This document shows, piece by piece, positions 4,854 through 64,000 of a stretch of 64,000 nucleotides of DNA. Source of the DNA: Octopus bimaculoides (lineage: Eukaryota); assembly GCF_001194135.2 (NCBI RefSeq), contig NC_068994.1:48054256-48118255 (forward strand), read 5' to 3'. Each line of letters starts with the position of its first letter. The stretch's first letter is position 1. The notes under the pieces are model-generated. The model was not told the DNA's origin. It made no database searches and worked only from the letters and a program-made list of their open reading frames with translations. The translations under genes and the position numbers were made by a program.

Positions 4854-4889
<36 letters not shown>

Positions 4890-20856: not shown

Positions 20857-21684
20857 GCATGGTAATGATTCTGCCTGCTTGCCACCTTAATAACAATAGT
20901 AAGATATTCCGTCTTTCGTTAGCAAACAAATATGCCTCACTTTTCAGAATTAATTTTCTGATAAAAAGAGGTCACAACTCTTGACTGAAGAAAATAGTTT
21001 TAAAAAATACTGTCAAATATAATTTCACACTGGAAAATCTCAGGAGTTCCTTCGTTATTTGATTTCAGGGGTTTATTGTTATTGTTATCGCAAGCATAGA
21101 ACCGAGAAAAGGAGTGGGGCACTTTATTGTTATGCTGAACATATTTATGAGCGTAGCACCTATTCTGCTATGTCTGCTAAGTAACTGACCAATTATCTTT
21201 TGGAAATTAAAAAAAAAATAAAAAAAAAGAACAGAAAAAATAAGATTTAAGTACCTAATTTAAGAGAGAAAGAGTGACATACACTATGTAGTGTAATTGG
21301 TAATGTGGTCCCTTGGCAAGCAATAAATATATGGTTCCAGCATCATTGTCTGTTTTCTGTTGCAAATTGATGTTTAAAATGTTTAATGTCAATTCACATT
21401 GAAAAGCTTAGTTAATTCATTTGTAGTTTTAAATAATTTTATTAGAAAAAAAAGGGAGAGAAGAAAAAAAAAGACTGATGTTGAGTGTGAGTGACTTTTG
21501 AAGCCAGCAAGCCAAACCTCAACCATGTCTCTGTTTTGGAAGAGATTGAGGTATAGTTAAAAGTAGCAGCAATATTGATTAAGAATGTATGACAGGAGGA
21601 CTCAAGGACAATGAGAGAGGTGGATGTGGTGAGAGGCAAGAGCTACAACAAGCTGGGACATAGCAGGCCAGTTCTTAATTCGAG

Positions 21685-26595: not shown

Positions 26596-26626
<31 letters not shown>

Positions 26627-28382: not shown

Positions 28383-28422
<40 letters not shown>

Positions 28423-31400: not shown

Positions 31401-34400
31401 CAATGCCAGCATGAAACATGGGACATTAAATGATGATGTTTTATCCTAGAAGAATTATTAGTCATGTCTGGTACTTATTCTATAGTTCTCATTTGTTGCA
31501 GAGCTGCTAAGTTATGGGGATAAACAAACCAACACTTGTTGTCAAGTGGTGTGTGTGTGTGTGTGTATGCGAGAAACACACAAACACACAGAGAAAAATA
31601 TGAAATGCATCACGAATTTGTGTCACCCTTGGACAAGGGCTATGCTAATCTCTGTATCATTGCAAATTCGTAAAGCATTCCATATTTTTATATATACATG
31701 ATGGGCTTCCACACAGTTTCCAACAACCAAATTCACTTACCAAGCACAGGTTGGCCCAGGACTGCAACAGAAGGAACTTCGCCCAAGGTGCTGCACAATG
31801 AGACTGAACACGAAACTATGTGGTTGCAAAGCGAGCTTCTTAACCACATAATCATTGCCCAGAAAATGTCATCATGCTTGGAAAAAAGATGGAAAGCCTT
31901 TGATCACATGTCTGCTCTGGGTGTAAGTTGCTTACCAAAATGGTTATCATAAGTTCCAACCTTACTACTACTACTACTACTACTACAACAGGTAGTGCAT
32001 TGCATCAAGGGTTCCCAAGCACATAGCTTTTTCTGTCTGGTTCACAAATAGCATCTTTCCCTTACATGACAATTCAGTGGTTAGCAGTATGGGAATAATG
32101 CAAATATCCAGCAGTTATAAAAGAAAACTTATCAAAACAATACAACAAAATACAAAATACCAACCCCACCAATTCCTTTTATCTTTTACCTGCAGGGTTT
32201 TAGTTGAACAAACTGACCCTCATATTTATTCTATCAGCTTCTTTTAGTGAACTGCTAAGACATGGAGATATAAACAAACACTAGTTGTTAAGTGGTGATG
32301 GTGGTGGTGGGGGGACAGACACAAACACACACACACACAGATACAACGGGCTTCCGCACAGGTCCCATCTACTGAATATACTCACAAGGCATAGGTCAGC
32401 CTAGGGCTATAGTAGAAGGTAGTTGCCCCAGGTGTCATGCGGTGGGACTGAACCTGGAACTACATGGTTGCAAAAAAGTAAGATTCTTAACCATACAGCC
32501 ATGCCTGCACCAATAGAACAAACAAAACATAACACAAGAGCAATGACACTCAGCCCCTTTTTTTGTCCATTCATGCTGCGTAACAAGAAGTTTGCCGTTA
32601 CCTTGCGTCACCGATTGAGGGTCAGTAGCCTGAGTAGTTGTACTTTCAATGGATTCTTCTTTCACAGCTAGCGGATCCTCAATTTCAACTTCCTTTTTTT
32701 CTAAACTTTGGCTGACTGCCAGGCCCGGAGAAGTATCCAGGCCCAGAGAATGTATTTTGGTTTGGTTAGGTGTGCCAAGTAGCTTTGATAATGTAGGAGC
32801 AGCTGGTTTCAACAAAAGAAATAGAATAATAACAATAACAACAACAACAGTACTGATAATTTCTAACTCAGGGACAAGGTCATGCACTTTGAGGAAAAGT
32901 GCAAATGATTACTTGTTCAGTACTTTACTTTAAATGATAAACACAAATAAATGTAGAGCAGTATATTACTTCCTGGAAGGGTCTCCATGCTGGACAGGCT
33001 CAAGGATAAAAGCCAGGCCAATTGGAGGAAATGTCAAGTGACCAAGAATTTTGGCGATTTGCTGTGCTTGAGAAGACATGCTAAGCTAAGTGAATCGTGG
33101 TCATTGCCAGTGCTGTCGACACATAAGAAACATCTGTACTGGTGATGCGTAGAGGCTCCATTCTTACCTTATTGCCAAAAAAAAAAAAAAAAAAAAAAAA
33201 GAGGTGAGGGCAGTATGGCAAAGGTTGGAATGCCTGTAATCCCAAGTTTGTTTGTTCAAACCTAACATAAGATTAAACTTAGTCATATGTACATAGTCTG
33301 CTACAAATGTGTTTGAATTAAACCCCCACATCACCAAAAGAACTTATTTGCCTCCTAGACATACTTTGTTAATAATTTTCGTCTTAATTTAAAATCTCTC
33401 TACAGCAAGGCTGTGTTAAGAATTTGCTTTCCAACCACATGGTTTCAGGTTCAGCCCTACTTTGTGGCACCTTGGGCAAGTGTCTTCTACTATAGCCACA
33501 GGCTGACCAAAACCTTGTAAATGGATTTGGTAGATGGAAACTGAAAGAAGTCTTATACATATATATATGTATGTGTGTATGTATGTATGTATCTATGTCT
33601 GCATGTCTTTGCATCTGTGTCTATTCCCCCATCACTGACAACCAACGTTGGTGTGTTTAAATCCCAGTAACCTAGTGGTTTGGCAAATGATATCAATAGA
33701 ATAAGTACAAGGCTTTAAAAAATAAGTCCTGGGGTCAATTCAATTGACTAAAAAGCCTTCGAGGCAGTGTCCTAGTATGGCTGCAGTCGAATGACTGAAA
33801 CAAGTAACATATAGAAGACACAGCTTAACTTACCAAGTACTGACATTGTTTAATTCAGAGCAAATCAATTTATTTTATATATCATTTTGTGAATAATAGT
33901 GCCACTAGCTACAGGTTTCCAAAGGGACAATCATTTGTTTCTGACATTTATGAAGGAGGAAATGGCAAAGGAGTGAGTGAGTGAGTGCATGCATAACCTG
34001 GGTGGAAAAGATGCCACAAGGTATTTTAGTTCCAAAGAATACTGGTTTACAAATTTTCTTGGTGATGTTTTACATCTTTTGCTAATATTCATCAGTAANN
34101 NNNNNNNNNNNNNNNNNNNNNNNNNNNNNNNNNNNNNNNNNNNNNNNNNNNNNNNNNNNNNNNNNNNNNNNNNNNNNNNNNNNNNNNNNNNNNNNNNNNN
34201 NNNNNNNNNNNNNNNNNNNNNNNNNNNNNNNNNNNNNNNNNNNNNNNNNNNNNNNNNNNNNNNNNNNNNNNNNNNNNNNNNNNNNNNNNNNNNNNNNNNN
34301 NNNNNNNNNNNNNNNNNNNNNNNNNNNNNNNNNNNNNNNNNNNNNNNNNNNNNNNNNNNNNNNNNNNNNNNNNNNNNNNNNNNNNNNNNNNNNNNNNNNN

Positions 34401-34497: not shown

Positions 34498-37400
34498 TCA
34501 ATAAATGGCAGGCTACTATAGTCTCTGTTCATCAAATTTCACTCACAAGGCACTGTTCAATCTAAGGCTCTGATGGGAGGCATTTGTCTGATGTGCATGT
34601 AGTAGGATTGAACTCGGAATCGTGTGGTTTTGAAATGAACTGTTTTACCACGGAGCCATGCCTGCATCCAGATATGTGATATATCAAATAGCTTCATATC
34701 AAAATCATTTTTGACAACATCAGTGCAAATAATGAGAAACTGAAATTTAAAGGAAGAGCAGACACGTGCAAGAGAAAAGGGGGATGGGTGGGAAGGGAGG
34801 AATTCTATTTGCTAAAGATATAAAGATCTTAAATAATTTAATTATAGCTAAATGAAGAATAGAACAAAAATAAAGACAGCCTTTCTTGCTTCTTACAAAG
34901 GAATTTATGTCATTTATAAAAGCTGTAAATCTGAAGGTGAAACTTACAGGTAGAGGGGGACGTATTATCAACAGAGACCCTGTTCATTACTGTAGGCAGG
35001 TCACCTGAGAGTGCACCAAGAACTGTGGGAGTGGCTGAAGATAGGACTTTTGAAGCTGCCAGAACAGTCATTGGTGGCAGTTGTTGTGTAGAAGTGACAG
35101 TGCTGGCAGTGGAAGAGAGAGTTGATAGTTGAGATGTGCTGAGGGTTGCAATAGCTGGCAGTGGAGTGGTGACAGGTGAACTGTGGTTACTGCTTGAGGA
35201 GACTGGCTTACTGGAAATGGATACGTTCAGGCTCGATGAGCTGGTTGTCACATTAACTGGTAATTCCACTGCGGTCAGCGCTGATGAAGTGGAAAGTGGC
35301 AATTGAAGAGAATGTGTGACTGGAACTTGCAAATGTTGAAGTGCCTGGAAAGCAGAGTGTTCCTGTTCAGCTTCCTAAAAGAGAATTGTCAATATTGTTA
35401 TTACATGTGGTGGTGGTGTTCTGTCAATATTCATAAAAATAAAAAAATATAAAGCTGTGATATATATGGGTATGGCTGTATAAATAAACATTATCTGATG
35501 TACAATAACACCACACAGGTGCTTTTATGTGGCACCACACAGGTGCTTTACATGGAACTGTCACAAGTATGGAGGAGGGGATAAGTTAATTACATCGACC
35601 CCAGTGCTCAAAAAGATGAAAAGCAAAGTTGACCTCAGCGGAATTTGAACTCAGAACATAAACACAGACAAAATGCTGCTAAGCATTTTCCCCGGCATGC
35701 TAACGATTCTGCCAGCTCGAGACCTTACACCAGCTTAATAACAACAAAGTTATTTTATTAAATTCTTGATTATTTTCAGTTAATTACAACACAGGCGGTG
35801 TATGTCAACAGCAATATGGTTGCAAAAAAGGGTTCCAAAACAGGAAAAGGACAAACCTTCTTCAGTTGCTGGAGGCTGTCAGCACTTTTTAATTTACTCT
35901 GTAATAAGGAAGAGAGCAGTGGAGACGACGGTGGGGTCGGTTTGGTTTTCTGTTGCTGTTGCTGCTGTAGTTGCTGCTGCTGCTGCTGTTGTTGTTGTTG
36001 TTGTTGCTGTTGCTGTTGTGGTGGAGGAGGAGGTGGTTGTGGTGGTAGCTGTTGCAACTGTTGTTGTAGTTGTACAGATTGCTGCTGCTGTTGCTGTTGT
36101 TGCTGTGGAGGTTGTGTTTGTTGTTGTTGCTGTTGCTGTGCGTGTTGCTGCTGCTGCTGTTGTTGTTGCTGCTGTTGCTGTGACAGTTGAGACAAAGTAT
36201 GAAGTTGCTGTTGTTGTGATTGACGCTGCTTCTGTTGTTGCTGCTGCTGCTGCTGTTGCTGTTGCTTTTGTTGTTGTTGCTGTTGTTGTTGTTGTTGTTG
36301 TTGTAGTTGCAGCTGCTGTAACTGTTGCATCTGAATATGTTGTAACTGTTTCAAGTGCAACTGTTGCTGCTGCTGCTGTTGTTGCTGCTGCTGTGATGAT
36401 CCCTGTGACACTACCGGCACAGATGTACCAGCTGCCTGAGTTTGCACCACTTTACTACTACTGCTGCTGCTGCTGCTACTACTACTATTGCTGCTGCTAC
36501 TGCTACTATTAGTAGTAGTAGTATTAACCAACTCAGGCTGCTCGGTCACCTGTGGCGTTATGTGTCTCGGTTCAAAGTCTTCAGCTTCCTGCAGAAAGAA
36601 AATTAGAAAAAAAGAGTAAGATAAAACTTGAAACAATTGACTAAAGATTTTTTAAATCCTAAGTCAGCTCTGATCAAGCAGACTTATAATTAAAGGTTTC
36701 CAAGTTTGACTATTTTGTCTTTTTTACAGACATATCATATCTAAGATTACATTAGATGGTTTGAGAGATTTGGTTGCTATTTCTTGCAGGTTGGACAACA
36801 ACGTAAGGGCTTCTTCACTGGCTTGTCCTGTAATTGTTTCTCAGTTTCTCTGGCGTAGACATTTCTACTTGGATGGGACACCGGTCCATCACAGGATTAC
36901 TCAATTTTATCAGTTGAGTGGACTGGAACAACGTGAAATGAATTGTTTTGCTCAAGAACACGAAACCCATAACCTGGTCCAGGAATCAAATCCACAATCC
37001 TACAATCATGAATCCAACACCCTAACCACTAAGTCATGTGTCTTCACAGTTGACCAAAGAGTGGATTTAAATCATTCATAAGAGAAGACCTCGAATGTTG
37101 AGGCAAGACTAGACAAAACAAAAAACGAGGAAATTTTAATAAGACTATATTTACTGTAATTTTCTCGGCTGTTGAAGTTTCTGTTGTGGGTTCATCATCT
37201 TTATCGTCAAACACATCTGTTGATGATGGTGGTCGGCTACGTTTCGGATTCGGACGTTTTATTTTAAAGGAACCTAAAAAAAGAAATAAAGAAGTGAAAA
37301 ACAATCTCTTAAAAAATGCTGAATTGGTAAATGTTGTAATGAGAACCCATAACTAAATATCTTAAAAAGTTAAAGAAGTGATTTTTAAATTCTCAATCGC

Positions 37401-43900: not shown

Positions 43901-45327
43901 GTCAAATCAATCAGATTGATTTAGGAGCCAAACAACAACAAAAACAACTTCTGAACAGTTATCGCTTAATTAACTACACTCGAAAGGTGTAAGCCCTTCA
44001 TAAGAGGCCGTGCAGTGGGATCGAATCAGGAACAATGTTGTTGTGATCCCACCGAATAGAAAAAATGAAATTTTAGTTTTCGGTAGTCACTTAGAACCAC
44101 ACAATACAATATGTCCTCTTTTAAGGGTTTCATTTATAAGAAACAACCTACATGGTCCCTCGATCTGTTTGGAATAGCAGCCAACCGTCACTAAGATAAT
44201 AATCTATCATCAGAGAAAAAAAAGACCAGATAGCTATGGTTCGAAGACTAGATTACTTAATCGGGGATTGACGTAATTGCACAACAGCATAGAAGCATCG
44301 TCGTCAGCTTGTAGTGATTTCAAATCGCAGTTGCCGAAAGCTAATTTCCATAATTTATATGGCTAATTTTGTTATGTTGTATCTAAGAAAACTTTATCAT
44401 TAACTAAAACAATGTATGACTCATTTTTTAAAGATATACATATTTTTCTTTAATATGATTTAGGCTTTTCATTCGAAACAGTCGGTTTCGAGTGTTGGAA
44501 TTGAGAGGGAAACTGCATTGCGTCGAAAGAAAGAGTTTTGTCCCTTATTGTTTTGAGTATTGCGTTCGCGTTCGATTTTTGCTTTTCATTTCACTGAGGG
44601 AGGTTGATATAAAAATAAATACCAGAAATACTGAATCCAGCAACTACTCTCTTAATATGTATAAATATATATAAAGGAATATCAAACTTGAATGTCTATA
44701 TATATACAATATACGAGTTATCAACCCAAATATCCTCGCATTTCTGTGTGTAAACGGCGCAATGCAGTTTTCTTCAATTGGATGTATGTGAATGTGTGGT
44801 GGAGTTTACTTCATAGATGCAGAAAAGTGCAAGGAATTGGGCGGGGTTGGTTTTTTAAAATCTTGTTTTATTTGTTTTATGCAACGGGAATAACCATTCT
44901 GAAAGAATTTTTGATAATTTTTCGAAGAAAGTATCTGAAAAGTGATTGCTGAATTTTCTTCAACAAGAGATTTCAGTTTTTTAAATACTTTTGCCTCCCC
45001 TTCCTTCTAATTCCTTACCCTTTTCATTAAGTAGTGATAGCTATTCCGTAACTCAGCTGTGTGTGTATGTGTGTGTAAGTGAGCGTGCGTGCGTGCATGC
45101 GGATTTTGGTAGTTCAATGGTAAACAAAAACATGAGCGCTCATACATATACTACAATAAAAGGATGATTATGTACAATAGACACAGTAATTAGGGGCGGA
45201 AGACTTAAATTTCAATCGGATATCTAAATTTTGAAAAAACACTACAAGAGAAAATGCAAACTGAATATATAAATATAGAAATACAAAGATAGATAGAGCG
45301 AGTTTACTCACTAGGAGCGGTAGCCAT
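21685..45327 (-). CDS. BRD8: Bromodomain-containing protein 8 (NuA4/TIP60 subunit); 20 coding exons, 3255 nt, 1084 aa
   Basis: Phase-consistent GT-AG exons. N-terminal WSIKEQLSLACSVMKNGDQNWMSVSRAIK..RPADWFSQK, central APTLSKLL, SDSIPNSPAS, WKKSIMLVYRAAA, and bromodomain YANVFLHPV..APGYHSIVHRPMDLSAIKKNIENG..EFQRDMMLMFTNAIMYN match recalled human BRD8. Confidence 0.95.
22345..22505 (+). mobile_element. RTE-clade LINE ORF2 C-terminal fragment
   Basis: SALREKSDLTSIRCGVQERRLRWYGHVLRMNEDRCVKKC contains the RTE hallmark RRLRWxGHVxRM. Confidence 0.8.
22687..22767 (-). CDS. BRD8: BRD8 exon 19
   Basis: QFVSTQLMVQTEPKMLRPSRRMENIEK. Confidence 0.92.
22880..23430 (-). mobile_element. Stack of three family B SINEs
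   Basis: Three GGATGAA..CAAAG cores separated by (AAT)n tails. Confidence 0.7.
23700..23798. mobile_element. hAT/Charlie-type MITE end
   Basis: Ends AAAAAGTTTGAGAAACACTG, the reverse complement of a CAGTGTTTCTCAAAC-type TIR; no partner end seen. Confidence 0.4.
23901..24078 (-). CDS. BRD8: BRD8 exon 18 (bromodomain)
   Basis: PMDLSAIKKNIENGVIRSTTEFQRDMMLMFTNAIMYNSSDHNVY..HIE. Confidence 0.97.
24255..24323 (-). CDS. BRD8: BRD8 exon 17 (bromodomain)
   Basis: YANVFLHPVREEIAPGYHSIVH. Confidence 0.95.
24904..24984 (-). CDS. BRD8: BRD8 exon 16
   Basis: SDTEDEKAYRTWKKSIMLVYRAAATH. Confidence 0.95.
26429..26850 (+). mobile_element. Full-length young family A SINE
   Basis: tRNA-like head with A box (TGACTGTGTGG) and B box (GGTTCAGTCCC), CCTTGGGCAAG-type CORE-like segment, internal (TA/TG)n, purine-rich tail. 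Confidence 0.85.
26909..27084 (-). CDS. BRD8: BRD8 exon 15
   Basis: EDEKKEDG..ESDDP..ALSDSIPNSPASLSH. Confidence 0.92.
28100..28223. mobile_element. Short MITE with CAGT(A/G)GC..AGCT TIRs
   Basis: CAGTAGCACAGCT..AGCTATGCCACTG; same family as 30369-30523. Confidence 0.5.
28881..28930 (-). CDS. BRD8: BRD8 exon 14
   Basis: GRKKGGINRRNVKRQII; supplies the required phase 1 to 0 bridge; donor GTGAGT. Confidence 0.8.
29640..29844 (-). CDS. BRD8: BRD8 exon 13
   Basis: ETSKDSSDD..MKDEPPSPSSSVSS..AGRPRGRGR. Confidence 0.88.
30199..30556. mobile_element. piggyBac-type TTAA MITE carrying a nested MITE (30369-30523)
   Basis: TTAA|CCCTTTAGCATTT..AAATGCTAAAGGG|TTAA; inner TIRs CATTAGTGTAGCT / AGCTACGCTAGTG. 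Confidence 0.8.
30663..30967 (-). CDS. BRD8: BRD8 exon 12
   Basis: ETIEEKIPVPNIQDED..QTQLKMD. Confidence 0.85.
31460..32510 (-). mobile_element. Two degenerate family A SINEs (31460-31850, 32180-32510)
   Basis: GCCC(A/C)AGGTG..GACTGAAC..TGGTTGCAA head segments in reverse orientation. Confidence 0.65.
32602..32802 (-). CDS. BRD8: BRD8 exon 11
   Basis: SAPTLSKLLGTP..PQSVTQ; symmetric phase 1-1, 201 nt. Confidence 0.88.
33405..33810 (+). mobile_element. Family A SINE
   Basis: GGCACCTTGGGCAAGTGTCTTCTACTATAGCC..AATAAGTCCTGGGGTC. Confidence 0.8.
34948..35374 (-). CDS. BRD8: BRD8 exon 10 (S/T-rich)
   Basis: EAEQEHSAFQALQHLQVPV..VDNTSPST; donor GTAAGT. Confidence 0.85.
35570..35722 (-). mobile_element. 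Family B SINE
   Basis: AAAGTTGACCTCAGCGGAATTTGAACTCAGAAC..TCTGCCAGCTC. Confidence 0.7.
35857..36588 (-). CDS. BRD8: BRD8 exon 9 (poly-T/S/Q/P, 244 codons)
   Basis: EAEDFEPRH..poly-Q..PPSSPLLSSLLQSKLKSADSLQQLKK; CAG acceptor, AAG|GTTTGT donor, phase 0-0. Confidence 0.85.
37155..37273 (-). CDS. BRD8: BRD8 exon 8
   Basis: GSFKIKRPNPKRSRPPSSTDVFDDKDDEPTTETSTAEKIT. Confidence 0.8.
37360..37468. repeat. 36-bp perfect inverted repeat in BRD8 intron 7
   Basis: Arms 37366-37401 and 37427-37462 exact; 25-nt spacer; extends ~6 more bp with one mismatch. Confidence 0.9.
37998..38080 (-). CDS. BRD8: BRD8 exon 7 (poly-Ala)
   Basis: EKKVKDAAVQ(A)9SRKTGRTE; phase 2 to 1 fits both neighbours; weak donor GTTCTT. 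Confidence 0.75.
39155..39470 (+). mobile_element. RTE-LINE 3' UTR with ~65-bp internal tandem units
   Basis: Three GTGGCATGTAAAAA(G/A)CA units, then GGAAGGACATCCAGCTGTAG and ..GTTAAACGACGATGATG tail. Confidence 0.75.
39524..39604 (-). CDS. BRD8: BRD8 exon 6
   Basis: KLKREIECIKNGQFDDCIQEVWEAMV. Confidence 0.9.
40439..40558 (-). CDS. BRD8: BRD8 exon 5
   Basis: RKRSDKEANETPGELIVRKLTMDRLEELKKIIVEEENRY. Confidence 0.93.
41633..41682 (-). CDS. BRD8: BRD8 exon 4
   Basis: NCALLYAELLEKVEIPK. Confidence 0.9.
41991..42063 (-). CDS. BRD8: BRD8 exon 3
   Basis: MSVSRAIKAFAEGGSRPADWFSQK. Confidence 0.95.
42280..42600 (+). mobile_element. tRNA-derived SINE family C
   Basis: TGGCTCAGTG A box, GAGTTCAATTCCC B box, GTTGCTCCAGTTCACTCAGCT core. 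Confidence 0.65.
42960..43053 (-). CDS. BRD8: BRD8 exon 2
   Basis: KHKGKHVLLDKWSIKEQLSLACSVMKNGDQNW. Confidence 0.95.
43150..43500 (+). mobile_element. Two family B SINE copies
   Basis: TTCAAATCCTGC..GTCAACTTTGCCTTTCATCC. Confidence 0.6.
45312..45327 (-). CDS. BRD8: BRD8 exon 1
   Basis: MATAP, A|GTGAGT. Confidence 0.8.
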
Positions 45328-45620
45328 GTTACACTCGGGTCTGCGAGCCGAATGGAAATGTTCTAGTCGCACGATCACGTTAATTAAGCATGTAAGATAA
45401 ACAAATTCGATTTTGTTTGTGCAAGTATGTGTTTTGTTTTAAACGACTTAGGAAGGAGCGATGCGTTTCTATTTCCGTTTTGATCGCGACCGTTCTTAGG
45501 CTTTAATCGTGTAAGGGATCTGATTGTTTCCCCAGTATAGTCGAGTGGAGTGTATTTGTCACGTGACAACCGGTAATTGTTAATATGGCGGTTGTACAGA
45601 GTTGGTAGCCGCCATATTCA
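45328..45620 (-). promoter_or_regulatory. BRD8 promoter/5'UTR with palindromic E-box and paired YY1-like sites
   Basis: GTCACGTGAC 45558-45567; AATATGGCGG 45582-45591 and CCGCCATATT 45609-45618; CpG enrichment ~44.0-46.4 kb. Confidence 0.6.
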
Positions 45621-47009
45621 TACTTTCACTTCCACTCCTTCTTTTCTTCTTCCCAATTTGAATAACGTACACCTTTTGGTTTCATTGTAGCTGGTGGACA
45701 TGAAAGTATATTCTCATAGTCTTCTCGATATCCAGCTTCAACATCAAAATTATAGAATTAAACGAAACAGAATGTTTTAACGAATTATAGTATAATTAAA
45801 ATTTGTGGGTGACTAAAAAAAAAATTTAAGGTATATACGAATAGTACCAATGAAAGATAATTGATAATATTTTTTAAAGTTAACATTTGTGATAAATTAG
45901 ATTTTCAATTATTATTGATAAAAATATTAGACATTATATCAATTCGAAAGAGAGAACGGTAATACGGACTTGAACTGCAGCTTCTCGAATGCCAGCTCAT
46001 ATTGGTGCTTCTTGAGATCTAATACCATTTACAATCAAATCTTAGCACATACTTTCTAATTATTAATTTTGTTTCAATAAAATTATATTTTTTCAATCAT
46101 TCGAATACAGAAAAAGTCTCATGTTAGAACTAAAACTTCAAGTCTATCTGAATATTTTATTGTCCGTTTCAACATTGTCGTTTCGATGATGACCTAGTCT
46201 TGGATTCACACTGTGAAGAATTAACGTCTGTTATGTCCTCCAAGTTTTTTAAAAATAACTATTCAAATAGTAGTTAGACATTGTGACCGAAAAGTGTGAA
46301 ATATTTAAGTATTTCACATACAGGAATGAACGCGATGAGTTTAATTTACCGTGGGATGCACTTCGTTTGAGAATGAGAAAGAAAAAGTGTTATCGCTTCG
46401 ACAGTAAAATAACCATACATACTCGAATGGAAAAGTAAACTAATATAGGCTTCTTATTTCTGATTAAAGAATTAAAAGAAAACAAAATTATCTTTCAAGT
46501 GTGCGTCATTGATCAAAACTAACATTACTGTAGTGCTCTATTCTTGCTTGGACTCAACTCAATGGTAGTTTTCCTAGGATGTAAAGCATTTCAAACCAAG
46601 ACCATGCCATATATNNNNNNNNNNNNNNNNNNNNNNNNNNNNNNNNNNNNNNNNNNNNNNNNNNNNNNNNNNNNNNNNNNNNNNNNNNNNNNNNNNNNNN
46701 NNNNNNNNNNNNNNNNNNNNNNNNNNNNNNNNNNNNNNNNNNNNNNNNNNNNNNNNNNNNNNNNNNNNNNNNNNNNNNNNNNNNNNNNNNNNNNNNNNNN
46801 NNNNNNNNNNNNNNNNNNNNNNNNNNNNNNNNNNNNNNNNNNNNNNNNNNNNNNNNNNNNNNNNNNNNNNNNNNNNNNNNNNNNNNNNNNNNNNNNNNNN
46901 NNNNNNNNNNNNNNNNNNNNNNNNNNNNNNNNNNNNNNNNNNNNNNNNNNNNNNNNNNNNNNNGACCAACAGTACACTTAGACTGTGAGGTTCCCAATCT
47001 TATTTATGG

Positions 47010-47890
47010 ATCTTACCTTTTGGCCGGCACATTTAAAAAATAATTTTTTGTAACTAAACACTTTCAAAATTCGTATACTTGTAGAATGTGTCACATAAAA
47101 CATCATTTACTCTTGGCGTTTTTGAGAAAATTGCGTATTTTCGAAGTTATTTCGTGTTAAAGTTGTCGTATTTCGGTAATTTCAACCAATCAATGACGTC
47201 TATTGAGGTGAACACAATTACTGCTGTCGTTTGTCAACAGAACGTTCCGGCGGTGTATATTTAGTTTGTCACTGTTATTTCTGACATATTTCATTTGAGA
47301 TACACGTGTGTATAATTTAATCGTTTCAGTTATTGGTTATTTTTTTCCATTTTTTCAGTTTGTTTTGTTTGGGAAATTATTTTCGTTTACTTTTTGTTTG
47401 TAATTTGAATTGGGTTCAGTCCACAGCTGCACTGTGGCTCATCCCCAGTTCTTCTACGGTTGTGGGTAACCACAAGCTATCTTTCTTTTCCAGCTTGTTT
47501 ACATACTGCGTAACAGTTTGTTTCCGCAGTGATCGCTTCAAACAAGCATGCTGCAAAAAAATAATAATAATAAGTCTATTGGTTTCGCTTCTTGAGTAAG
47601 ACTGTGAGTAGACCCTGTCTTCTCAGAAAAATTGTAAATAAAAACATTAAAAAAGTTTTTACTCCATTCTGGTGTAAATCACCCTGTTGCCGCTTTCAGT
47701 TTCTTCAGAATCGCTGCTTTCGGGTTCGGATACAGAAATATCCGATTCATTTTCGTTCACCATGTGTTTTTGTACCTCTTTCATTCTTTTAAATATATTT
47801 GTGTAGGAATTGCCAATTTCTTCTTCGTGCCCTTATTTACAATTATTAGTGCAGCTTTTCCTTTTTCTATGCTTCTCTGCCTATACTGCT
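47010..47890 (-). mobile_element. piggyBac-derived element with transposase remnants
   Basis: Acidic MVNENESDISVSEPESSDSEETES (47763-47690) and frameshifted LFEAITAETNCYA/QYVNKLEKKDSLWLPTTVEEL (47550-47440) resemble the PGBD motif IVxETNxYA..WxPTTxEEL; CpG-rich. Confidence 0.45.
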
Positions 47891-57500: not shown

Positions 57501-60500
57501 GGGTGCTTCAGAGGTTGGGCCTCACAGAGGGGATGACAATGGACCAAGGCTTCTGGTGATTTGCTGTGCTTGAGAAGATATGTCAAGCTAAAACATATCC
57601 GTATGTCCTTTACGGCCATGCCCTCACTCCCTCTCTCAGATGAGATGTCCTTGTCTTGCAGCCTGGCAGGTATTGGTGCCATGTAAAAAGCATCTGTGCC
57701 AGTGAACAGTAGTAACAATAGGTTATGGGGTTGGCATACATACTCAGCACTAAAAATAAAAGAAAACAAAAACAGTAGTAGCAGCAGCTGCAACAGTAAT
57801 ACAAAGCCAATGAGGGAGTTTCTATGTCATTACTTGACATACTAGAAATATCAGCCAAATCACCCTCAAATTACACCCTACCACCTTAAAAGAGAGATCT
57901 GCATCAGGGTTGCATGTAGCTCAATAACACTACCAGAACACATTGTATAAGGTAGTCCTAGGCTCACTATGTCTACTGATGGCTGGATCAAAGCTATCCG
58001 AGATGATAAATCAACTGCAACAACAAAAATATATGAGAACAACTTACCAAGAAGTGCACAGACCAACGGACGACACATAGGAAATTGGTCTACATTAACC
58101 TTCCGATGTCGCATAGGCTACAAGACAATACAGTAGAGGTGTCAGAGTCTTTTTTGAATTAACAATTACAAACAAACCTAACTGGAAAAAAGAAATACAT
58201 AGAAGTAAATAGATAAATAAAACTCACCATTCTGTGCAATGGAACACGAAATGTCATATTATTATCGGTCATTAAAGAATTGGCATACTGATCCTGGAAT
58301 TACAGACAAAACACCAACATTAATGTTAACACCTAAAAGTATTGCATTTACTGTTTTCTAACATCTATTTTATCACACCAACAACAGTAGAATAAGAGAA
58401 ATTGAGAGACTGCAGCTAATTCTTTGCAACTGGATTACCTCCTTTATACTTTTAACCACACAGCTACGAAGTGGGAGTAGTTCCCGTTTTATTGTTAACC
58501 AGAAAATTCCATATCTTTACTTACCTCAGCAATGCAATTGAGTATTATTAAACATAGTTTAGCATTGTTATATCTAGTTTCATCTGAAATAAACAAAAAC
58601 ATAGTGAATCTAAAATATAGTTTACAGTTAACAACAACCACAATTCAGATTTACTTTATAAAAACTAAAAAATACCACAATTGAGTGAATTAAATGTCAC
58701 AGGCGAGTTCAATTTTATAGCATGCATTTTGTGGACAGCAGCATTGTTGCAACATAGGTTGCATCACTGGTGCCTTGCATTACCAATGGTGAGAGTGACA
58801 AGGGAGTGTTTGTACAACTGAGGCAGAATAAATACCACCAAAAGGTATTTTTGTTTGACGTACTGGTTTTACAGACAATTCCTTTGCCAATCTGAATATC
58901 TGTTATACATTCTGCAGAGCTTGTGTCAGCTAAATTTCATGCACAAGACATTGATCAACTGAAGGTTATGGCAGAAGATACTTGCCCAAAGTGCAATGCA
59001 GTGAGATTGAACTCAGAACTCAGAAGCACTGATATAAAAGGTATCAGGGTACCATGGGGTACCAATCTGAGACAACAGTCTGTTGTGATAAAATCTTTAC
59101 CTTTTGTGTCCTGCATAACGATGGAACTGTATTCTAGAAATGTGACCAACAAGTTGGTCGGCTGTTTCGTTGGTTCATCTGGATTTAATGTGGCATCTGA
59201 AACTGGAGAGAGTGACATATGATAAGATTATTTGACGTAATGATAAAGTGAGATGGATGTGGAGATATAAATACTGAGAAGGGAAAACTGACAGAAAGCA
59301 GAGAAGTGGCACACAGGTCAATGAGGTGTGACACTAGACAGGAAAGAGAAGTGGAAGATAAGACAAAGACTTGTGGCACAGAGTGGGGTGACTGGGATAT
59401 GATCCAATGAGGATGCATAGGGTGGGAAAGTAGGCAATGAGATGTAGCTCAGAACAGAGAGGTGGAACATGAAACATGCAGGGCAAGGAGATGGGACAGG
59501 AAAATGGGACAGGAAAATAGGACAGGGGAACAGGGTGCTACAACACTGGACACAAACACACACACACACCCCTGGTGTAATGTTTATTTCAACTTTTTTT
59601 AGAAAGATGTCATAATAGTTTTCAAACCAACTACCACAGTAGCTATTTAGAGCTAGATGGACTCTAGCAAACTGATAACTATTTACAAATAAATTGATTG
59701 TACCACCACATGGTGTATAGTTGAATGAACTGTACCATCTAATGGCACCTATAAAGTGTACCGCTGCAATGGAGTACACATATGTACAGACTTTACTTTC
59801 TCATGTACCTATCTACAGTAAGGCAAACTATTTAACTGTGGATTTATTTACAGCTAAGTGGACTGTACTATCCCATGATCCATATTTCCTGCTGATGGAC
59901 TAGAGCACTTCAGAATTGACTGTCTTAACTAGACATGAGACAGCTTTTAATTGAACACTGGTAAATTTGGTCCAGATGGACTATATGTAATCTGAACCTT
60001 TCCCCCCTTGTTTTATTTTATTTTTTTTACGGAATCCTACGTTTTAGGCTATGGAGATGCCGATTCTGAAATTTTTTTTTCAAAAATCTCAATTTCAAAA
60101 TTTCGNNNNNNNNNNNNNNNNNNNNNNNNNNNNNNNNNNNNNNNNNNNNNNNNNNNNNNNNNNNNNNNNNNNNNNNNNNNNNNNNNNNNNNNNNNNNNNN
60201 NNNNNNNNNNNNNNNNNNNNNNNNNNNNNNNNNNNNNNNNNNNNNNNNNNNNNNNNNNNNNNNNNNNNNNNNNNNNNNNNNNNNNNNNNNNNNNNNNNNN
60301 NNNNNNNNNNNNNNNNNNNNNNNNNNNNNNNNNNNNNNNNNNNNNNNNNNNNNNNNNNNNNNNNNNNNNNNNNNNNNNNNNNNNNAAAAAAATTAATAAA
60401 TAAGGGGGGGAAAGGTTCAGATTACATATAGTCCGTCTCTACCGTAAATTTCGTAGTGCTATCACTGCTTGAAGCAGTAAGCTGTTACTGAGAAGACAAT

Positions 60501-62586
60501 GAAAATGCAAGAAAAAAAAGCAAACTTACCTTGTTCTTCTGTTGGTAATGAGGTAGGGAATGCTGGAGATGCAGGTGGTGTTGCTGGTGTAGATGGTGTG
60601 TGTGCCTAGTGAATGATGGTTTATAAAACTTGATAAGTGAATTAGCTAACGAAATATCTCATGTATTCATGATAAACAAATATCTCATCACAATACAACA
60701 TGTATAAACTTCTACAGGTTTCAGTCATTGACTGCAGTTATGGAGTCATATTGCCTTCATATATAGATGACATAGAAATATATTAATTTATTACAGTTTT
60801 TTTCCTCTATAAACACCCTTCCTGATATTTTGTCTTCGAGCGGGTGACACGTAAAAGCACCCACTACACTCTCTGAGTGGTTGGCATTAGGAAGGGCATC
60901 CAGCTGTAGAAACTCTGCCAAATTAGATTGGAGCCTGGTGTAGCCATCTGGTTTCACCAGTCCTCAGTCAAGTCGTCCAACCCATGCTAGCATGGAAAGC
61001 GGACGTTAAACGATGATGATGATGATGAAACCCACCCTGGCACCTCATCACCATCACCTCTTTCCAGTCTCACCTTAATTACTCCCATCCATTCTTGTAT
61101 AATGCAAGTAGCCATGTATCTCCTCTACAGCAAGAAGAAAAAAAAGTCTGTCCCTGCCCCATCCTTCATATTTTAACCTTTCATCACCTAGCATAATGTT
61201 AGTGTCCCACACAATCAAAAGGATCTTAGTCTTGCAACCTCACAGGAGCTGGCTCCACAAGAAAAAAAGCAACCAGTACACTCTGTAAAGTGGTAGACAT
61301 TAGGAAGGACATACAAATCAAAGGAGTTGCAACGACGATCATTCTATCTTTTTGGCTGCTATTTCTAGAGCAGGTCAGGTGACCATGTAAGGACTCCCTC
61401 ACTAGCTTGACTTTATACTAAGTTTGAAAGAATCATAAAGTTTTTACATTTTGAGAAACTAAAAATTGTATTGTACTGCTGAGTTACGTATCTTAAATGT
61501 GTGTGTGTTAGCAGGTTAGTGTGGATTTCATTTTTCACTTCCTTTTTACACAATGCCTTACACTACTTGTATACAATTTTTATACCTTTAATAAGTCAAG
61601 CAAAGAAAGACAGCAATGAAAGCTAGAATTAAACAGAATAAAACACAAACATATAGAAAAGTAGGCATTAAAAAGCATTACAAGAAAAGGGTACACAGGC
61701 ACAGATTTTGGGAATCATGGAATTCTTGCAGTGTCCTGACAACTGATACAGGTAGTTTATTGCATACTTAACAAGTCTGAGTGTGAAATAGTGTTTCTGA
61801 AAGTCATGGGTGCTGTGCTATGTTTTGATTTTAGAAGCATGTCCATGAGGTGGCCAAAGTTGTTGTTGGAAAGATGGTGGATAATTTTGAGGGTTTCTAT
61901 TAAATCTGCTACTATATGGTGAAACTTTAGTGTGTTGAGGCCCAAATAAGTAATGTACTCAAGATGTGATAAGTGACTGAGAAAGAGTAATTGCCTGATT
62001 ACACATCTCTGGAAAGCTTGTTATATTGTACTATATATGTGGATTCGTGGTTTACTGTGCGTGTGTTTGTTCATTTTTCTGTCTTTTACTTTGTGTAGCT
62101 ATCTGGTTGAAATTTACATTGTGTAAGAAAAATAAATGAAGAAAACTCCAGATAATACTAACATGTGTCAGAGCTGTGATGAAATTACGATTTAAGTGAA
62201 TAGCTTCATAAAGGGCCAGTAAGATGGAATCATTGGCTCTGAAAATATATGAAAACATACAAAACAATACAATTCCTAATAACGTTTAATTATAAAAATA
62301 TAATAACAGGATTTTTTTAAACATTGAATGGCTATGAAGGTCCACCCATGTAAAATGGGAATCAAAGAGGTTCATAGGCAAAAGATGGTTGTGAAACACT
62401 GTATTAGACTATGACTGATAAGAAAGACCAGTTGGTCATAGCTGAAGCACCTTTAATTACAGGACCTGCTGGATTAGTAAAAATAATTATAAAATAGATT
62501 AGTCCCCTCCCCCCGAAAACTTAACGTTTTTATATTTACCTGACTGATTCCACTGTCTTCTCTTCTGCAACAAACATGTTACCAAC
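50214..62586 (-). CDS. ARMH3: Armadillo-like helical domain-containing protein 3 (C10orf76/UPF0668, DUF1741); C-terminal 15 exons, 405 aa; 5' part not in window
   Basis: Phase-consistent GT-AG exons. [90 protein letters not shown] match recalled human ARMH3 from ~residue 278 onward. Confidence 0.95.
50394..50602. mobile_element. piggyBac-type TTAA MITE
   Basis: TTAA|CCCTTTAG..AGGG|TTAA; interior homologous to 30199-30556. Confidence 0.7.
51015..51131 (-). CDS. ARMH3: ARMH3 exon
   Basis: [39 protein letters not shown]. Confidence 0.96.
51310..51465 (+). mobile_element. Family B SINE
   Basis: GTGAGCTGGCAAAAATGTTAGCATGC..TTTGCCTTTCATCCTTTC. Confidence 0.7.
52164..52242 (-). CDS. ARMH3: ARMH3 exon
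   Basis: [26 protein letters not shown]. Confidence 0.95.
52888..52963 (-). CDS. ARMH3: ARMH3 exon
   Basis: [25 protein letters not shown]. Confidence 0.93.
53243..53345. repeat. (AACC)n tetranucleotide microsatellite
   Basis: Directly visible; one of many (TA)n, (CA)n, (GA)n, (CAT)n, (AAT)n tracts in the window. Confidence 0.9.
53382..53508 (-). CDS. ARMH3: ARMH3 exon
   Basis: [42 protein letters not shown]. Confidence 0.97.
54061..54143 (-). CDS. ARMH3: ARMH3 exon
   Basis: [28 protein letters not shown]. Confidence 0.95.
54943..55031 (-). CDS. ARMH3: ARMH3 exon
   Basis: [29 protein letters not shown]. Confidence 0.96.
56529..56589 (-). CDS. ARMH3: ARMH3 exon
   Basis: [20 protein letters not shown]. 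Confidence 0.95.
57120..57340 (-). mobile_element. Family B SINE
   Basis: GAAAGGATGAAAAGCAAAGTTGACCTTGGTGGAATCTGAACTCAG. Confidence 0.65.
58048..58117 (-). CDS. ARMH3: ARMH3 exon
   Basis: [23 protein letters not shown]. Confidence 0.95.
58228..58293 (-). CDS. ARMH3: ARMH3 exon
   Basis: [22 protein letters not shown]. Confidence 0.95.
58525..58583 (-). CDS. ARMH3: ARMH3 exon
   Basis: [20 protein letters not shown]. Confidence 0.95.
59101..59196 (-). CDS. ARMH3: ARMH3 exon
   Basis: [32 protein letters not shown]. Confidence 0.95.
59969..60443. mobile_element. MITE with ~45-bp TIRs and 8-bp TSD GTAAATTT; interior in a gap
   Basis: Left GGTCCAGATGGACTATATGTAATCTGAACCTTTCCCCCCTT matches the reverse complement of the right end; TSD at 59961-59968 and 60444-60451. 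Confidence 0.85.
60530..60605 (-). CDS. ARMH3: ARMH3 exon
   Basis: [25 protein letters not shown]. Confidence 0.88.
60840..61030 (+). mobile_element. Young RTE-LINE 3' end
   Basis: GGAAGGGCATCCAGCTGTAGAAAC..GGAAAGCGGACGTTAAACGATGATGATG; further copies at ~11000, 24560, 27295, 29080, 31255, 37660, 41030, 55445. Confidence 0.8.
62163..62238 (-). CDS. ARMH3: ARMH3 exon
   Basis: [25 protein letters not shown]. Confidence 0.95.
62540..62586 (-). CDS. ARMH3: ARMH3 exon (first in window)
   Basis: [15 protein letters not shown](R), cf. human VGSMFIAD. Confidence 0.85.
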
Positions 62587-63379
62587 CTAAAAATAACATA
62601 AATAAATATTTGTTATTTTGAAATGAATTCAATAAAATATTCCACAAGTGACTATGTTAGAAACCAAAATTTAACCCACAATTTTGGTTTCTACTTGATC
62701 AAATGTAATTTCAATTTTTGTCTTTTAATCATTTCAATACCAAACCACTTGAGGCTGTCCCTTGTTCTTTGATATGGAATTTCTATTTTAAAGAGATTTA
62801 AATTAAAACTTTCTATCAAAATTTCTCATTATTTTATGTTCCAAACACCAGGTTAATAACGACAAAGAATTTTACTAAATTTTTCATTATTTTCAAAATT
62901 AATTGAAACAACAGAAATGTTGTAAGAAAAAGCTTAACAGATCATTAAGGACTACATTATCTAATGTTTCATGTTTTTTTTTTCAAAGGTAAGACACATT
63001 GTATGAAAATAAAAATAAAAGATAAAATAATGGATGGTCACTTTTGAAATGTCTTGGATCAAGATTGACCTGGGAAACAAACAACTATGAATTAGAAATT
63101 TAAAAAAAAAAAAAAAAACATTGCTGCAGTCATCTCCCCTGATTCCTCGCTACCCTCCAACTCTTCAATTCGCTGACATACAAACGTAATCAGACAATTC
63201 CATCACAACATTTCAAATGAATTAATGTATTAAGTAAGAAACAATTGAAACTTCGAATTTAAATAACATTACTCCAATGTCACTCCAATAACATTCCTCA
63301 GGAATTAATAATCAAAGAAATTTCAGCTGACAATATGCAAATGAGAAATATCACCTGATGTATCATAAGATAAAATGTA

Positions 63380-63900
63380 CAAGTTAAAGTCGCAAAACAC
63401 CAATAATCGATCCTTCTGTGTTCAGAAGAAATGATGAATCGGGTTATCACGTACTGATATGTGAGACATGTCGCCGTTTACCTTGTTACGACTATACGAC
63501 ATGACACCCTGTCTGATTCTCTGAATTAACTAACCAAGAAGGATCACTAACCGGTTGTATCAGATACTGGAGCCGATCTTAGACTTACCGGAGCTAAAGT
63601 AATTCTTTATACAAGAGCGTCGAAGTATAAATGTTTATTTAGCCTGGATTTTTGGCTAGTCTTTCACTTAGCTGAAATAGCGCATCTGCTCACGCCACGA
63701 CTACAGGACACTTGACAGATGTTACTACTCCGGGTCTGAGTAGACCTGGGTCCAAAGTGGTTAAGAGGTGGTTCCCACTTCCGGGCGAAGGTAAAGAATA
63801 CGCACACGCGATGTTTAGGGTTACGCCAAAAACGGATGGTGTACGTATTCTTTACCTCAGCCTCACGACCGAAGGTAGTTTAGCGTCATACCCAATGTTA
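63380..63900. promoter_or_regulatory. CpG-rich promoter-like or structured-RNA island upstream of the mid-protein ARMH3 exon
   Basis: About 28 CpG in ~510 bp by hand count versus ~1 in 62581-63120; ETS-like CACTTCCGG 63776-63784; consensus minus-strand donors at 63588 and 63481. Confidence 0.55.
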
Positions 63901-64000
63901 TAAATAAAGTTATCGAATATATATGTAAACAACGTTCAGTCCAAAGTAGAAGTTACCACATGGAAAAGATATACTACATCCACTCAACTTCAAATAAACG

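What the first reader, a model, noticed from the sequence alone, without database searches (positions are those of the whole stretch)
63380..63900. Promoter-like CpG island where ARMH3 should be mid-gene: internal start or split gene
Seen: the most 5' ARMH3 exon here (VGNMF) corresponds to about residue 278 of the human protein, yet ~0.8 kb upstream CpG density jumps to the level of the true promoters in this window. The minus strand has a consensus donor CCG|GTAAGT (63588), an acceptor TTCAG| (63521) and a 39-nt exon ending AAG|GTAAAC (63482). Its ATG (63502, MSYSRNK) is in frame with VGNMF. Known: invertebrate gene bodies are methylated and CpG-depleted, while 5' ends are not. Inference: an internal promoter making an N-truncated DUF1741-containing isoform, a fissioned ARMH3, or a nested independent transcription unit.
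Basis: partly seen in the sequence, partly recalled or inferred. Interest (0 to 1): 0.7.

Follow-up and report, generated by a model that had tools for sequence, protein, structure and literature searches.

The report
Octopus U13 snoRNA gene inside ARMH3 intron

Summary
The window is Octopus bimaculoides (100% identical to CM046614.1).

**The CpG patch is real.** At 63345-64000, CpG o/e is 1.13, against 0.23 in the rest of the ARMH3 body. The patch is bounded at about 0.9 kb and ends about 245 bp beyond the window.

**ARMH3 is not split.** It is a full 692-aa gene in three Octopus species. The preceding exon lies 1.1 kb past the window end, so the patch sits in a 2.5-kb intron.

**The patch contains a U13/SNORD13 gene.** Rfam finds it on the + strand at 63409-63518, antisense to ARMH3 and above the gathering score. 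The orthologous site in O. vulgaris also scores above it, and O. sinensis carries the same sequence. The gene has:
- C and D boxes;
- both 18S helix-45 antisense elements (8 and 13 perfect pairs);
- the family's internal stems;
- the 3'-flank stem typical of independently transcribed pre-SNORD13.

It is the reverse complement of U13's 3' third. Its acceptor, upstream donor and reading frame are lost in O. vulgaris and O. sinensis.

**The patch looks like a germline-unmethylated island.** CpG sites there are retained between species far better than in the rest of the gene (25/36 vs 30/80).

About 730 bp of the patch 3' of U13, including a strong single-copy hairpin, stays unexplained. Intronic antisense SNORD13 genes in molluscs are already reported, so interest is low.

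The parts
63409..63518 (+). U13 / SNORD13 box C/D snoRNA gene, antisense to ARMH3
   Evidence: Rfam RF01210 scores 49.1 bits (gathering score 46), E = 4e-7 for the whole window, with the full model 1-104 matched. The orthologous site in O. vulgaris scores 49.9 bits. O. sinensis has the same sequence as O. vulgaris.
63409..63416 (+). 5' antisense element GAUCCUUC, complementary to 18S GAAGGAUC (3' side of helix 45)
   Evidence: Exact 8-nt complement, extendable to 11 pairs with G.U pairs. The 18S 3' end was typed from general knowledge. The element is invariant in three species.
63431..63437 (+). Box C (AUGAUGA)
   Evidence: Aligned to the C box of the Rfam consensus. It is the only UGAUGA in 63100-64000 on either strand.
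63447..63464 (+). Stem II hairpin, UCACGUA / UAUGUGA
   Evidence: Present in the MFE fold. The T>C change at 63460 in O. vulgaris and O. sinensis turns a G.U pair into G-C. It sits at the same place as UCAC...GUGA in the Rfam consensus.
63467..63502 (+). Stem III (CAUGUCG / CGACAUG), which encloses the internal antisense element
   Evidence: Present in the MFE fold. The Rfam consensus has AUGUGCC / GGCACAU at the same place, so the stem is kept with a different sequence.
63480..63492 (+). Internal antisense element ACCUUGUUACGAC, complementary to 18S GUCGUAACAAGGU (5' side of helix 45)
Evidence: 13-nt exact complement, unique in the window. Invariant in three species.
63513..63516 (+). Box D (CUGA)
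   Evidence: Aligned to the D box of the Rfam consensus; located.
63532..63545 (+). 3'-flank sequence that pairs with the U13 5' end (analogue of pre-SNORD13 stems IV/V)
   Evidence: Inverted repeat 63409-63422 / 63532-63545 (I15). GAUCCUUCU pairs with AGAAGGAUC over 9 bp in the MFE fold. In O. vulgaris and O. sinensis the C>T change gives a G.U pair. The feature is described for pre-SNORD13 in PMC9670809.
63335..63376 (+). Candidate promoter elements: octamer ATGCAAAT (63335-63342, -74 to -67) and A/T-rich GATAAAAT (63369-63376, -40 to -33)
   Evidence: Read from the sequence. Both are identical in three species. The octamer is no more frequent in the window than chance (7 found against 6.8 expected). 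Promoter function is inferred only.
63345..64000 (.). CpG-undepleted patch. It continues about 245 bp beyond the window (L003 about 14150-15050).
   Evidence: CpG sites are retained between species at 25/36 here against 30/80 in the rest of the ARMH3 body.
63784..63862 (.). Strong hairpin of unknown role inside the patch (24-nt arms, 31-nt loop)
   Evidence: I2. Folding gives -40 kcal/mol with z about -6 on either strand, in both species. It is single copy in the window and loci. The loop has a 14-nt indel between species.
62539..62586 (-). ARMH3 exon encoding residues 286-301 ([16 protein letters not shown]). The host intron runs from 62587 to beyond the window end.
   Evidence: tblastn with P0121, 100% identity. 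The intron is L003 13300-15807.
63482..63520 (-). It is not an exon; it is the antisense of U13 positions 74-110 plus 2 nt.
   Evidence: Its coordinates overlap U13. Its acceptor, the upstream donor and its frame are not conserved.

Best explanation
The 2.5-kb ARMH3 intron between the exons for residues about 266-285 and 286-301 holds a single U13 (SNORD13) box C/D snoRNA gene on the strand opposite to ARMH3.

**Shown.**
- The RNA has C and D boxes.
- It has the two antisense elements that pair with the 18S rRNA 3' end on either side of the helix-45 loop.
- It has the family's internal stems.
- A 3'-flank sequence masks the 5' antisense element in a 3'-extended precursor.
- ARMH3 itself is intact.

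**Inferred.**
- Because it is antisense to its host, U13 cannot be released from the spliced intron. It must be transcribed from its own promoter, probably snRNA-type Pol II with a capped 5' end, as in vertebrates and insects.
- The RNA then forms a C/D snoRNP that opens helix 45 so that NAT10 can acetylate the cytidine of the CCG motif.
- The CpG-rich patch is the footprint of a small island that escapes the germline gene-body methylation which has depleted CpG across the rest of ARMH3. It escapes because it carries this nested, active promoter and transcription unit, and possibly a second element 3' of U13.
For: **Source and host gene.**
- The window is 100% identical to O. bimaculoides CM046614.1.
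- ARMH3 is 692 aa in three species.
- All exons are mapped, and exon 11 ends at L003 13299.

**U13 identity.**
- Rfam RF01210 scores 49.1 and 49.9 bits (gathering score 46) at orthologous sites in two species. O. sinensis has the same sequence as O. vulgaris.
- Complementarity to the 18S 3' end is 13 nt and 8 nt exact, flanking the UUCCG loop.
- The GGGU/ACCC stem and stems II and III appear in the MFE fold and in the Rfam consensus.
- The 9-bp stem between the 5' end and the 3' flank matches stems IV/V of pre-SNORD13 (PMC9670809).
- None of the 4 differences between species touches a box or breaks a stem. One turns G.U into G-C in stem II. One lengthens the 18S pairing. One weakens only the G.U extension of the 5' pairing. 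One is an indel in a loop.

**Arrangement is a known one.** PMC9226516 reports SNORD13 homologues in Mollusca. Many are intronic, in sense or antisense orientation, and antisense ones require independent transcription.

**The island.**
- CpG o/e is 1.13 in the patch against 0.23 in the gene body.
- The patch is bounded in both species.
- CpG sites are retained at 25/36 in the patch against 30/80 in the gene body. There, 44 of 50 changes are TG/CA. Fisher p = 0.002.
- O. bimaculoides methylates the bodies of constitutively expressed genes but not promoters (PMC9476566).
Against: - No expression, cap, TSS or methylation data could be consulted, so independent transcription and hypomethylation are inferred.
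- The island is lopsided. On the U13 strand it starts only about 60 bp (shoulder about 300 bp) upstream of the U13 5' end and runs about 730 bp past the 3' end. U13's promoter alone does not obviously explain all of it.
- The octamer upstream is not above chance, and no octopus snRNA promoter was available for comparison.
- The three species are 90-98% identical throughout this intron. Plain conservation therefore says little about constraint on U13.
- Genome-wide copy number of U13 and of the patch was not measured.
- The 18S sequence used was typed from general knowledge, not taken from an octopus record.
Confidence: 0.78

Rival explanations
1. The patch is an internal ARMH3 promoter. Its transcript, with or without the 39-nt exon, splices to the VGNMF exon and yields an N-truncated ARMH3_C-only protein.
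For: The CpG level is promoter-like. In O. bimaculoides the splice-like strings and an in-frame ATG do exist. A transcript running divergently from the U13 promoter would travel in the ARMH3 sense direction toward the exon 750 bp away; that is inference.
Against: The proposed exon lies inside U13 on the other strand. In O. vulgaris and O. sinensis the acceptor AG is GG. The upstream donor is deleted in O. vulgaris and is AT in O. sinensis. A 1-nt deletion shifts the frame in both. The 90% protein cluster holds only three 692-aa proteins. The only gene called across the ARMH3 range in L002, L003 and L004 is ARMH3 itself.
Confidence: 0.06
2. ARMH3 is split here into two genes.
For: Only that the window ends before the N-terminal exons. 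Split annotations of ARMH3 do occur in other molluscs (Biomphalaria pfeifferi 511 + 207 aa; Mytilus coruscus fragments).
Against: Exons for residues 1-285 lie directly upstream in the same orientation in all three Octopus genomes. The flanking exons have matching splice phases...ANM|gtaagt and ag|VGNMF. Full-length 684-698-aa proteins from transcript-sized Logan contigs of unnamed source (89% identical to the window's exons) also exist.
Confidence: 0.01
3. Most of the island belongs to a second, undescribed unit 3' of U13, and U13 merely sits at its edge. That unit could be a hairpin small-RNA precursor (miRNA or hpRNA) or a short non-coding transcript with its own promoter.
For: About 730 of the roughly 900 bp lie beyond the U13 3' end. 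There is a 24-bp hairpin with z about -6 in both species. Its arms carry fewer changes than its loop, which has 5 substitutions and a 14-nt indel. A 77-nt stretch just before it has a single difference. The region is single copy.
Against: No Rfam family matches it. Background identity is already 90-98%. The strand cannot be assigned. No small-RNA data were available. The search of a paper's supplement for the arms was uninformative because the positive control also failed.
Confidence: 0.2
4. The patch is a young or unmethylated CpG-rich repeat or transposon fragment, and the U13 match is a dead retro-copy carried along with it.
For: Other CpG-rich patches in this window (19300-19800, 20600-21000, 26400-26870) are multi-copy repeats. 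Octopus transposons are largely unmethylated (PMC9476566). A decayed U6-like copy exists at 31594-31694.
Against: There is no second copy in the window, L002 or L003. The patch is at the orthologous site in three species, so it predates their split. U13 is complete with perfect antisense elements, and its substitutions keep the structure. There is no poly-A tail or target-site duplication next to U13 (by reading).
Confidence: 0.06

Closest known systems
Vertebrate SNORD13 (U13), Rfam RF01210
   Same: Box C/D architecture, a 5'-terminal and an internal 18S helix-45 antisense element, the GGGU/ACCC stem, stems II and III, and the 3'-flank stem that masks the 5' element. It is a separate gene rather than an intron-processed snoRNA.
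   Different: It is nested antisense in an intron of a protein-coding gene. The stem III sequence differs (CAUGUCG/CGACAUG against AUGUGCC/GGCACAU). No recognisable vertebrate PSE or 3' box was found. Cap and polymerase were not tested.
Invertebrate SNORD13 homologues (Or-CD1 of insects; candidates in Mollusca and other phyla; PMC9226516)
   Same: Intronic location, in sense or antisense orientation, with independent transcription despite lying in an intron. Outside Diptera both antisense elements are retained.
   Different: I could not check whether the octopus/ARMH3 locus is in that paper's list, because no supplement text is held. The link to a CpG-undepleted island inside a methylated gene body does not appear in the passages I read.
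Yeast snR45 / snR4 and plant snoR105/108/146 acetylation guides
   Same: The same logic applies: two antisense elements bracket the target cytidine and expose it to Kre33/NAT10.
   Different: There is little sequence similarity. These belong to other families, not RF01210.
Intragenic unmethylated CpG islands that mark nested or alternative promoters in genomes with gene-body methylation
   Same: A bounded patch of about 0.9 kb with CpG o/e about 1 inside a body with o/e 0.23, and slower CpG decay.
   Different: The unit it marks is a snoRNA gene, not an mRNA start. Methylation itself was not measured.

Membership tests
U13 / SNORD13 (Rfam RF01210) | Covariance-model score at or above the curated gathering score over the full model | tested here: met
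   49.1 bits in the window and 49.9 bits in O. vulgaris against a gathering score of 46, with model positions 1-104 matched.
U13 / SNORD13 (Rfam RF01210) | Box C (RUGAUGA) near the 5' part and box D (CUGA) at the 3' end | tested here: met
   AUGAUGA at 63431-63437 and CUGA at 63513-63516, both aligned to the consensus boxes.
U13 / SNORD13 (Rfam RF01210) | Two antisense elements complementary to the 18S 3' end on both sides of the helix-45 CCG | tested here: met
   GAUCCUUC (63409-63416) and ACCUUGUUACGAC (63480-63492) are exact complements of GAAGGAUC and GUCGUAACAAGGU. The 18S sequence came from general knowledge, not from an octopus record.
U13 / SNORD13 (Rfam RF01210) | Internal stems I-III as defined in PMC9670809 | tested here: met
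   The MFE fold gives GGGU/ACCC, UCACGUA/UAUGUGA and CAUGUCG/CGACAUG at the positions of the consensus stems. There is one G.U to G-C change between species. With only two distinct sequences, the covariation support is thin.
U13 / SNORD13 (Rfam RF01210) | 3'-extended precursor whose flank pairs with the 5' antisense elements (stems IV/V) | tested here: met
   9 bp between 63409-63417 and 63537-63545. The stem is kept with a G.U pair in O. vulgaris and O. sinensis. The feature is described in PMC9670809.
U13 / SNORD13 (Rfam RF01210) | Independent Pol II transcription with a trimethylguanosine cap | not testable with these tools
   Only indirect support. The antisense orientation excludes processing from the host intron. 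The 5' antisense element sits at the extreme 5' end. There is no T-run right after box D.
U13 / SNORD13 (Rfam RF01210) | Required for ac4C in 18S helix 45 by NAT10 | not testable with these tools
   This needs ac4C sequencing of octopus 18S and a loss-of-function test.
Alternative first exon / internal promoter of ARMH3 | Splice sites and reading frame kept in close relatives | tested here: not met
   In O. vulgaris and O. sinensis the acceptor AG becomes GG. The upstream donor is deleted (O. vulgaris) or becomes AT (O. sinensis). The ATG-to-donor stretch carries a 1-nt deletion in both.
Alternative first exon / internal promoter of ARMH3 | Transcript or annotated isoform starting here | tested here: inconclusive
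   The 90% cluster contains only the three 692-aa proteins. No RNA data are on hand.
Unmethylated CpG island | Bounded region with CpG o/e near 1 in a depleted background | tested here: met
   o/e 1.13 against 0.23. The limits are L003 about 14150-15050 and L002 about 28100-29450.
Unmethylated CpG island | Lack of germline methylation | tested here: inconclusive
   By proxy only. CpG retention is 25/36 against 30/80 with TG/CA decay outside the patch, p = 0.002. No bisulfite data were read.
microRNA precursor (for the 63784-63862 hairpin) | Hairpin of about 30 bp with arms more constrained than the loop, and mature 21-23-nt reads | tested here: inconclusive
   The hairpin is present, and the arm and loop changes fit the pattern. 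Read evidence is not available. No Rfam mir family matches.

The most novel reading that the evidence does not exclude
The island is a compound small-RNA locus. Besides U13 it would carry a second, undescribed, independently expressed element: the conserved single-copy hairpin at 63784-63862 and the 77-nt block before it, for example a cephalopod-specific miRNA or hpRNA. Alternatively, the U13 promoter fires divergently and gives a low-level N-truncated ARMH3 transcript. In either case a nested snoRNA promoter would carve an unmethylated window out of a methylated octopus gene body, and other transcripts would exploit it.
Probability: 0.15. Interest if true: 0.4.

Novelty: new member of a known kind. 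Interest (0 to 1): 0.15.

Why it matters
The practical value is in correcting the annotation.
- A promoter-like CpG patch in the middle of an invertebrate gene need not mean an alternative mRNA start or a split gene.
- Here the patch flags a nested, independently transcribed snoRNA gene.
- Short exon-like ORFs can be mirror images of conserved RNA elements. In this case MSYSRNK is the reverse complement of the 18S-complementary guide.

The locus adds a cephalopod example to the SNORD13 genes that guide 18S helix-45 acetylation. It also suggests that CpG-undepleted islets inside methylated gene bodies could be used to find independently transcribed small-RNA genes in molluscs. No long-standing question hinges on it.

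Tried and rejected
1. **False species lead.** A first protein search with a 171-aa patchwork query returned only short fragments and pointed to Biomphalaria. The B. pfeifferi locus L001 shares only exon-level similarity with the window and has no U13. A 409-aa query then gave Octopus.
2. **Plain conservation as evidence of constraint was dropped.** Background intron identity between O. bimaculoides and O. vulgaris is 90-98%. U13's 97% is therefore not exceptional.
3. **Octamer ATGCAAAT upstream of U13.** It occurs 7 times in the window against 6.8 expected, so it is suggestive at best.
4. **The U6-like hit at 31594-31694 as a promoter comparator was rejected.** It looks decayed.
5. **Supplementary list of SNORD13 homologues in PMC9226516.** No supplement text is held.
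6. **Search for the hairpin arms in the supplements of the octopus miRNA paper PMC9699675.** There were no hits. miR-1 and let-7 controls also gave none, so the result is uninformative.
7. **Open frames inside the patch.** No Pfam match. The frames are broken by indels between species.
8. **Second copy or tandem remnant of the patch.** None found in the window, L002 or L003.
9. **Permissive Rfam scans of the patch in both species.** Only U13 and sub-threshold chance hits appeared.
10. **tRNA scan.** None found.

Full report
**Where the window comes from.** The window has 36% G+C, a global CpG o/e of 0.34 and eleven runs of N. A 409-aa query assembled from the ARMH3 exons on the minus strand matched a 692-aa ARMH3 of Octopus vulgaris (P0121) at 99% identity. 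Its 90% cluster also holds the 692-aa proteins of O. bimaculoides and O. sinensis. The O. bimaculoides locus (L003, CM046614.1) is 100% identical to the window's minus strand. Window position equals 64000 - (L003 position - 14394). The O. vulgaris locus (L002) aligns at about 90-95%. A first lead to Biomphalaria was an artefact of a short query.

**The observation.** CpG density does jump. 300-bp windows between 63401 and 64000 hold 15-17 CpG, against a mean of 3.35, and only 0.8-1.5% of windows reach that count. CpG o/e is 1.13 for 63345-64000 against 0.23 for the rest of the ARMH3 body in the window. The TG+CA excess disappears as well, at 0.95 against 1.34. With the full locus in hand, the patch is bounded at L003 about 14150-15050. 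That is about 0.9 kb and ends about 245 bp beyond the window. It is bounded in O. vulgaris too. These are CCG|GTAAGT at 63588, TTCAG| at 63521, 39 nt ending AAG|GTAAAC at 63482, and ATG at 63502 in phase with VGNMF.

**ARMH3 is whole.** tblastn with P0121 maps 26 coding blocks in L002 and L003. VGNMF is residue 286. The preceding exon (...TGWFSAIANM|gtaagt) ends at L003 13299, which is 1.1 kb past the window's end. The patch therefore lies in a 2508-nt intron (L003 13300-15807). That intron is 6.2 kb in O. vulgaris because of a 3.6-kb insertion. ARMH3 is the only gene called across its own range in L002, L003 and L004. Fission is excluded.

**What is in the patch.** Rfam finds U13 (RF01210) on the + strand at 63410-63518. 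The score is 49.1 bits against a gathering score of 46, with E = 4e-7 for the whole window and all families.
- The orthologous site in O. vulgaris scores 49.9 bits. O. sinensis has the same sequence as O. vulgaris.
- The RNA has box C (AUGAUGA, 63431-63437) and box D (CUGA, 63513-63516).
- It has a 5'-terminal GAUCCUUC and an internal ACCUUGUUACGAC. These are exact complements of GAAGGAUC and GUCGUAACAAGGU at the 18S 3' end, on either side of the helix-45 UUCCG loop (the 18S sequence came from general knowledge).
- The fold gives GGGU/ACCC, a stem II hairpin, and a stem III that encloses the internal guide. All three sit where the Rfam consensus has them, and stem III has a different sequence.
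- The 5' end pairs over 9 bp with a sequence 19-27 nt past the mature 3' end. Thalalla Gamage et al. describe exactly this for pre-SNORD13 as stems IV/V, a 3' extension that masks the 5' guides (PMC9670809).
- None of the four differences between O. bimaculoides and the other two species touches a box or breaks a stem. One converts a G.U pair to G-C in stem II. One lengthens the 18S pairing by one pair. One weakens only the G.U extension of the 5' guide's pairing. One is an indel in a loop. In addition, a C>T change in the 3' flank gives a G.U pair in stem IV.

The 39 nt (63520-63482, minus strand) are the reverse complement of U13 positions 74-110 plus 2 nt. MSYSRNK is the mirror image of the 18S guide and stem III.
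- In O. vulgaris and O. sinensis the acceptor AG is GG.
- The upstream GTAAGT is deleted in O. vulgaris and is ATAAGT in O. sinensis.
- A 1-nt deletion falls between the ATG and the donor.

The splice model and its frame therefore exist only in O. bimaculoides, as expected for chance strings.

**How it most likely works.** U13 is antisense to ARMH3, so it cannot be cut out of the spliced intron. It must have its own promoter. Bortolin-Cavaillé et al. make the same argument. They found SNORD13 homologues in Mollusca and other phyla, many of them intronic in sense or antisense orientation. They also showed TMG-capped, independently transcribed intronic SNORD13 in insects (PMC9226516). The rest is inferred: the RNA assembles into a C/D snoRNP and holds helix 45 open so that NAT10 can acetylate the CCG cytidine. 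Upstream of U13 there is an octamer ATGCAAAT at -74 to -67 and an A/T-rich GATAAAAT at -40 to -33. Both are identical in three species. However, the octamer is not above chance in this window, and no octopus snRNA promoter was available for comparison.

**Why the CpG patch.** In O. bimaculoides, methylation sits on the bodies of constitutively expressed genes and is absent from promoters (PMC9476566). I tested the footprint this predicts.
- Among CpG sites present in either O. bimaculoides or O. vulgaris, 25 of 36 are kept in both within the patch.
- In the rest of the ARMH3 body, 30 of 80 are kept, and 44 of the 50 changes are to TG/CA. Fisher p = 0.002.

The patch has therefore escaped the methylation-type decay that shaped the rest of the gene. 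That fits a nested active promoter region. Direct methylation data were not available.

**What stays open.** The patch is lopsided. On the U13 strand it begins about 60 bp (shoulder about 300 bp) upstream of U13 and runs about 730 bp past its 3' end.
- That part holds a 24-nt-arm hairpin (63784-63807 / 63839-63862) with -40 kcal/mol and z about -6 on either strand in both species.
- The hairpin's loop carries 5 substitutions and a 14-nt indel, while its arms are nearly unchanged. A 77-nt stretch before it has one difference.
- It is single copy in all the octopus sequence held.
- It matches no Rfam family, and its open frames match no Pfam family.

It may be a small-RNA precursor, a foldback remnant, or part of the U13 transcription or termination zone. 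A supplement search for it was uninformative because the controls failed. Background identity in this intron is 90-98%, so conservation alone cannot settle the matter.

**Verdict.** The feature is an intron-nested, antisense U13/SNORD13 gene with a small CpG-undepleted island around it, inside an intact ARMH3. This arrangement is already described for invertebrate SNORD13 genes, and Rfam finds the gene at its curated threshold. It is a new member of a known kind at most, and of low interest.

Noticed in passing
window 31594-31694 (-): U6 snRNA match at 53.8 bits (gathering score 44). It lacks the 5' stem-loop, begins inside a TATATATAAAAATA run and is followed by a (CA)n tract. It is probably a decayed U6 copy rather than a working gene.
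   Followed up: partly
window 63784-63862: Strong single-copy hairpin (24-nt arms, 31-nt loop, -40 kcal/mol, z about -6 on both strands). It is conserved in O. vulgaris with a 14-nt loop indel. No known family matches, and its role is unknown.
   Followed up: partly
window 19300-19800, 20600-21000, 26400-26870: These CpG-rich patches are multi-copy repeats, with several copies inside the O. vulgaris ARMH3 locus L002. CpG richness alone does not mark promoters in this genome.
   Followed up: partly
window 35776-36636 (-): A 286-aa open frame dominated by polyglutamine (CAG/CAA) runs, probably an exon of a Q-rich protein.
   Followed up: no
L002 23945-27548 (O. vulgaris): An insertion of about 3.6 kb makes the host intron 6.2 kb in O. 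vulgaris against 2.5 kb in O. bimaculoides. A further 104-nt indel lies inside the CpG patch (L002 28790-28893).
   Followed up: no
L001 (Biomphalaria pfeifferi JASAOG010000049.1): ARMH3 is annotated there as two adjacent genes (511 aa and 207 aa), which looks like an annotation split. The orthologous intron (L001 about 4073-5097) has no U13, so the U13/ARMH3 nesting is not shared with this gastropod.
   Followed up: partly
window 45201-45700, 47001-47400, 501-1000: These are the other strong CpG-undepleted patches in the window (up to 20 CpG per 300 bp). They are presumably promoters of neighbouring genes and were not examined.
   Followed up: no
window 6534-60385 (11 sites): Eleven runs of N (10-422 nt) are assembly gaps. 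One (60106-60385) lies inside an ARMH3 intron.
   Followed up: no
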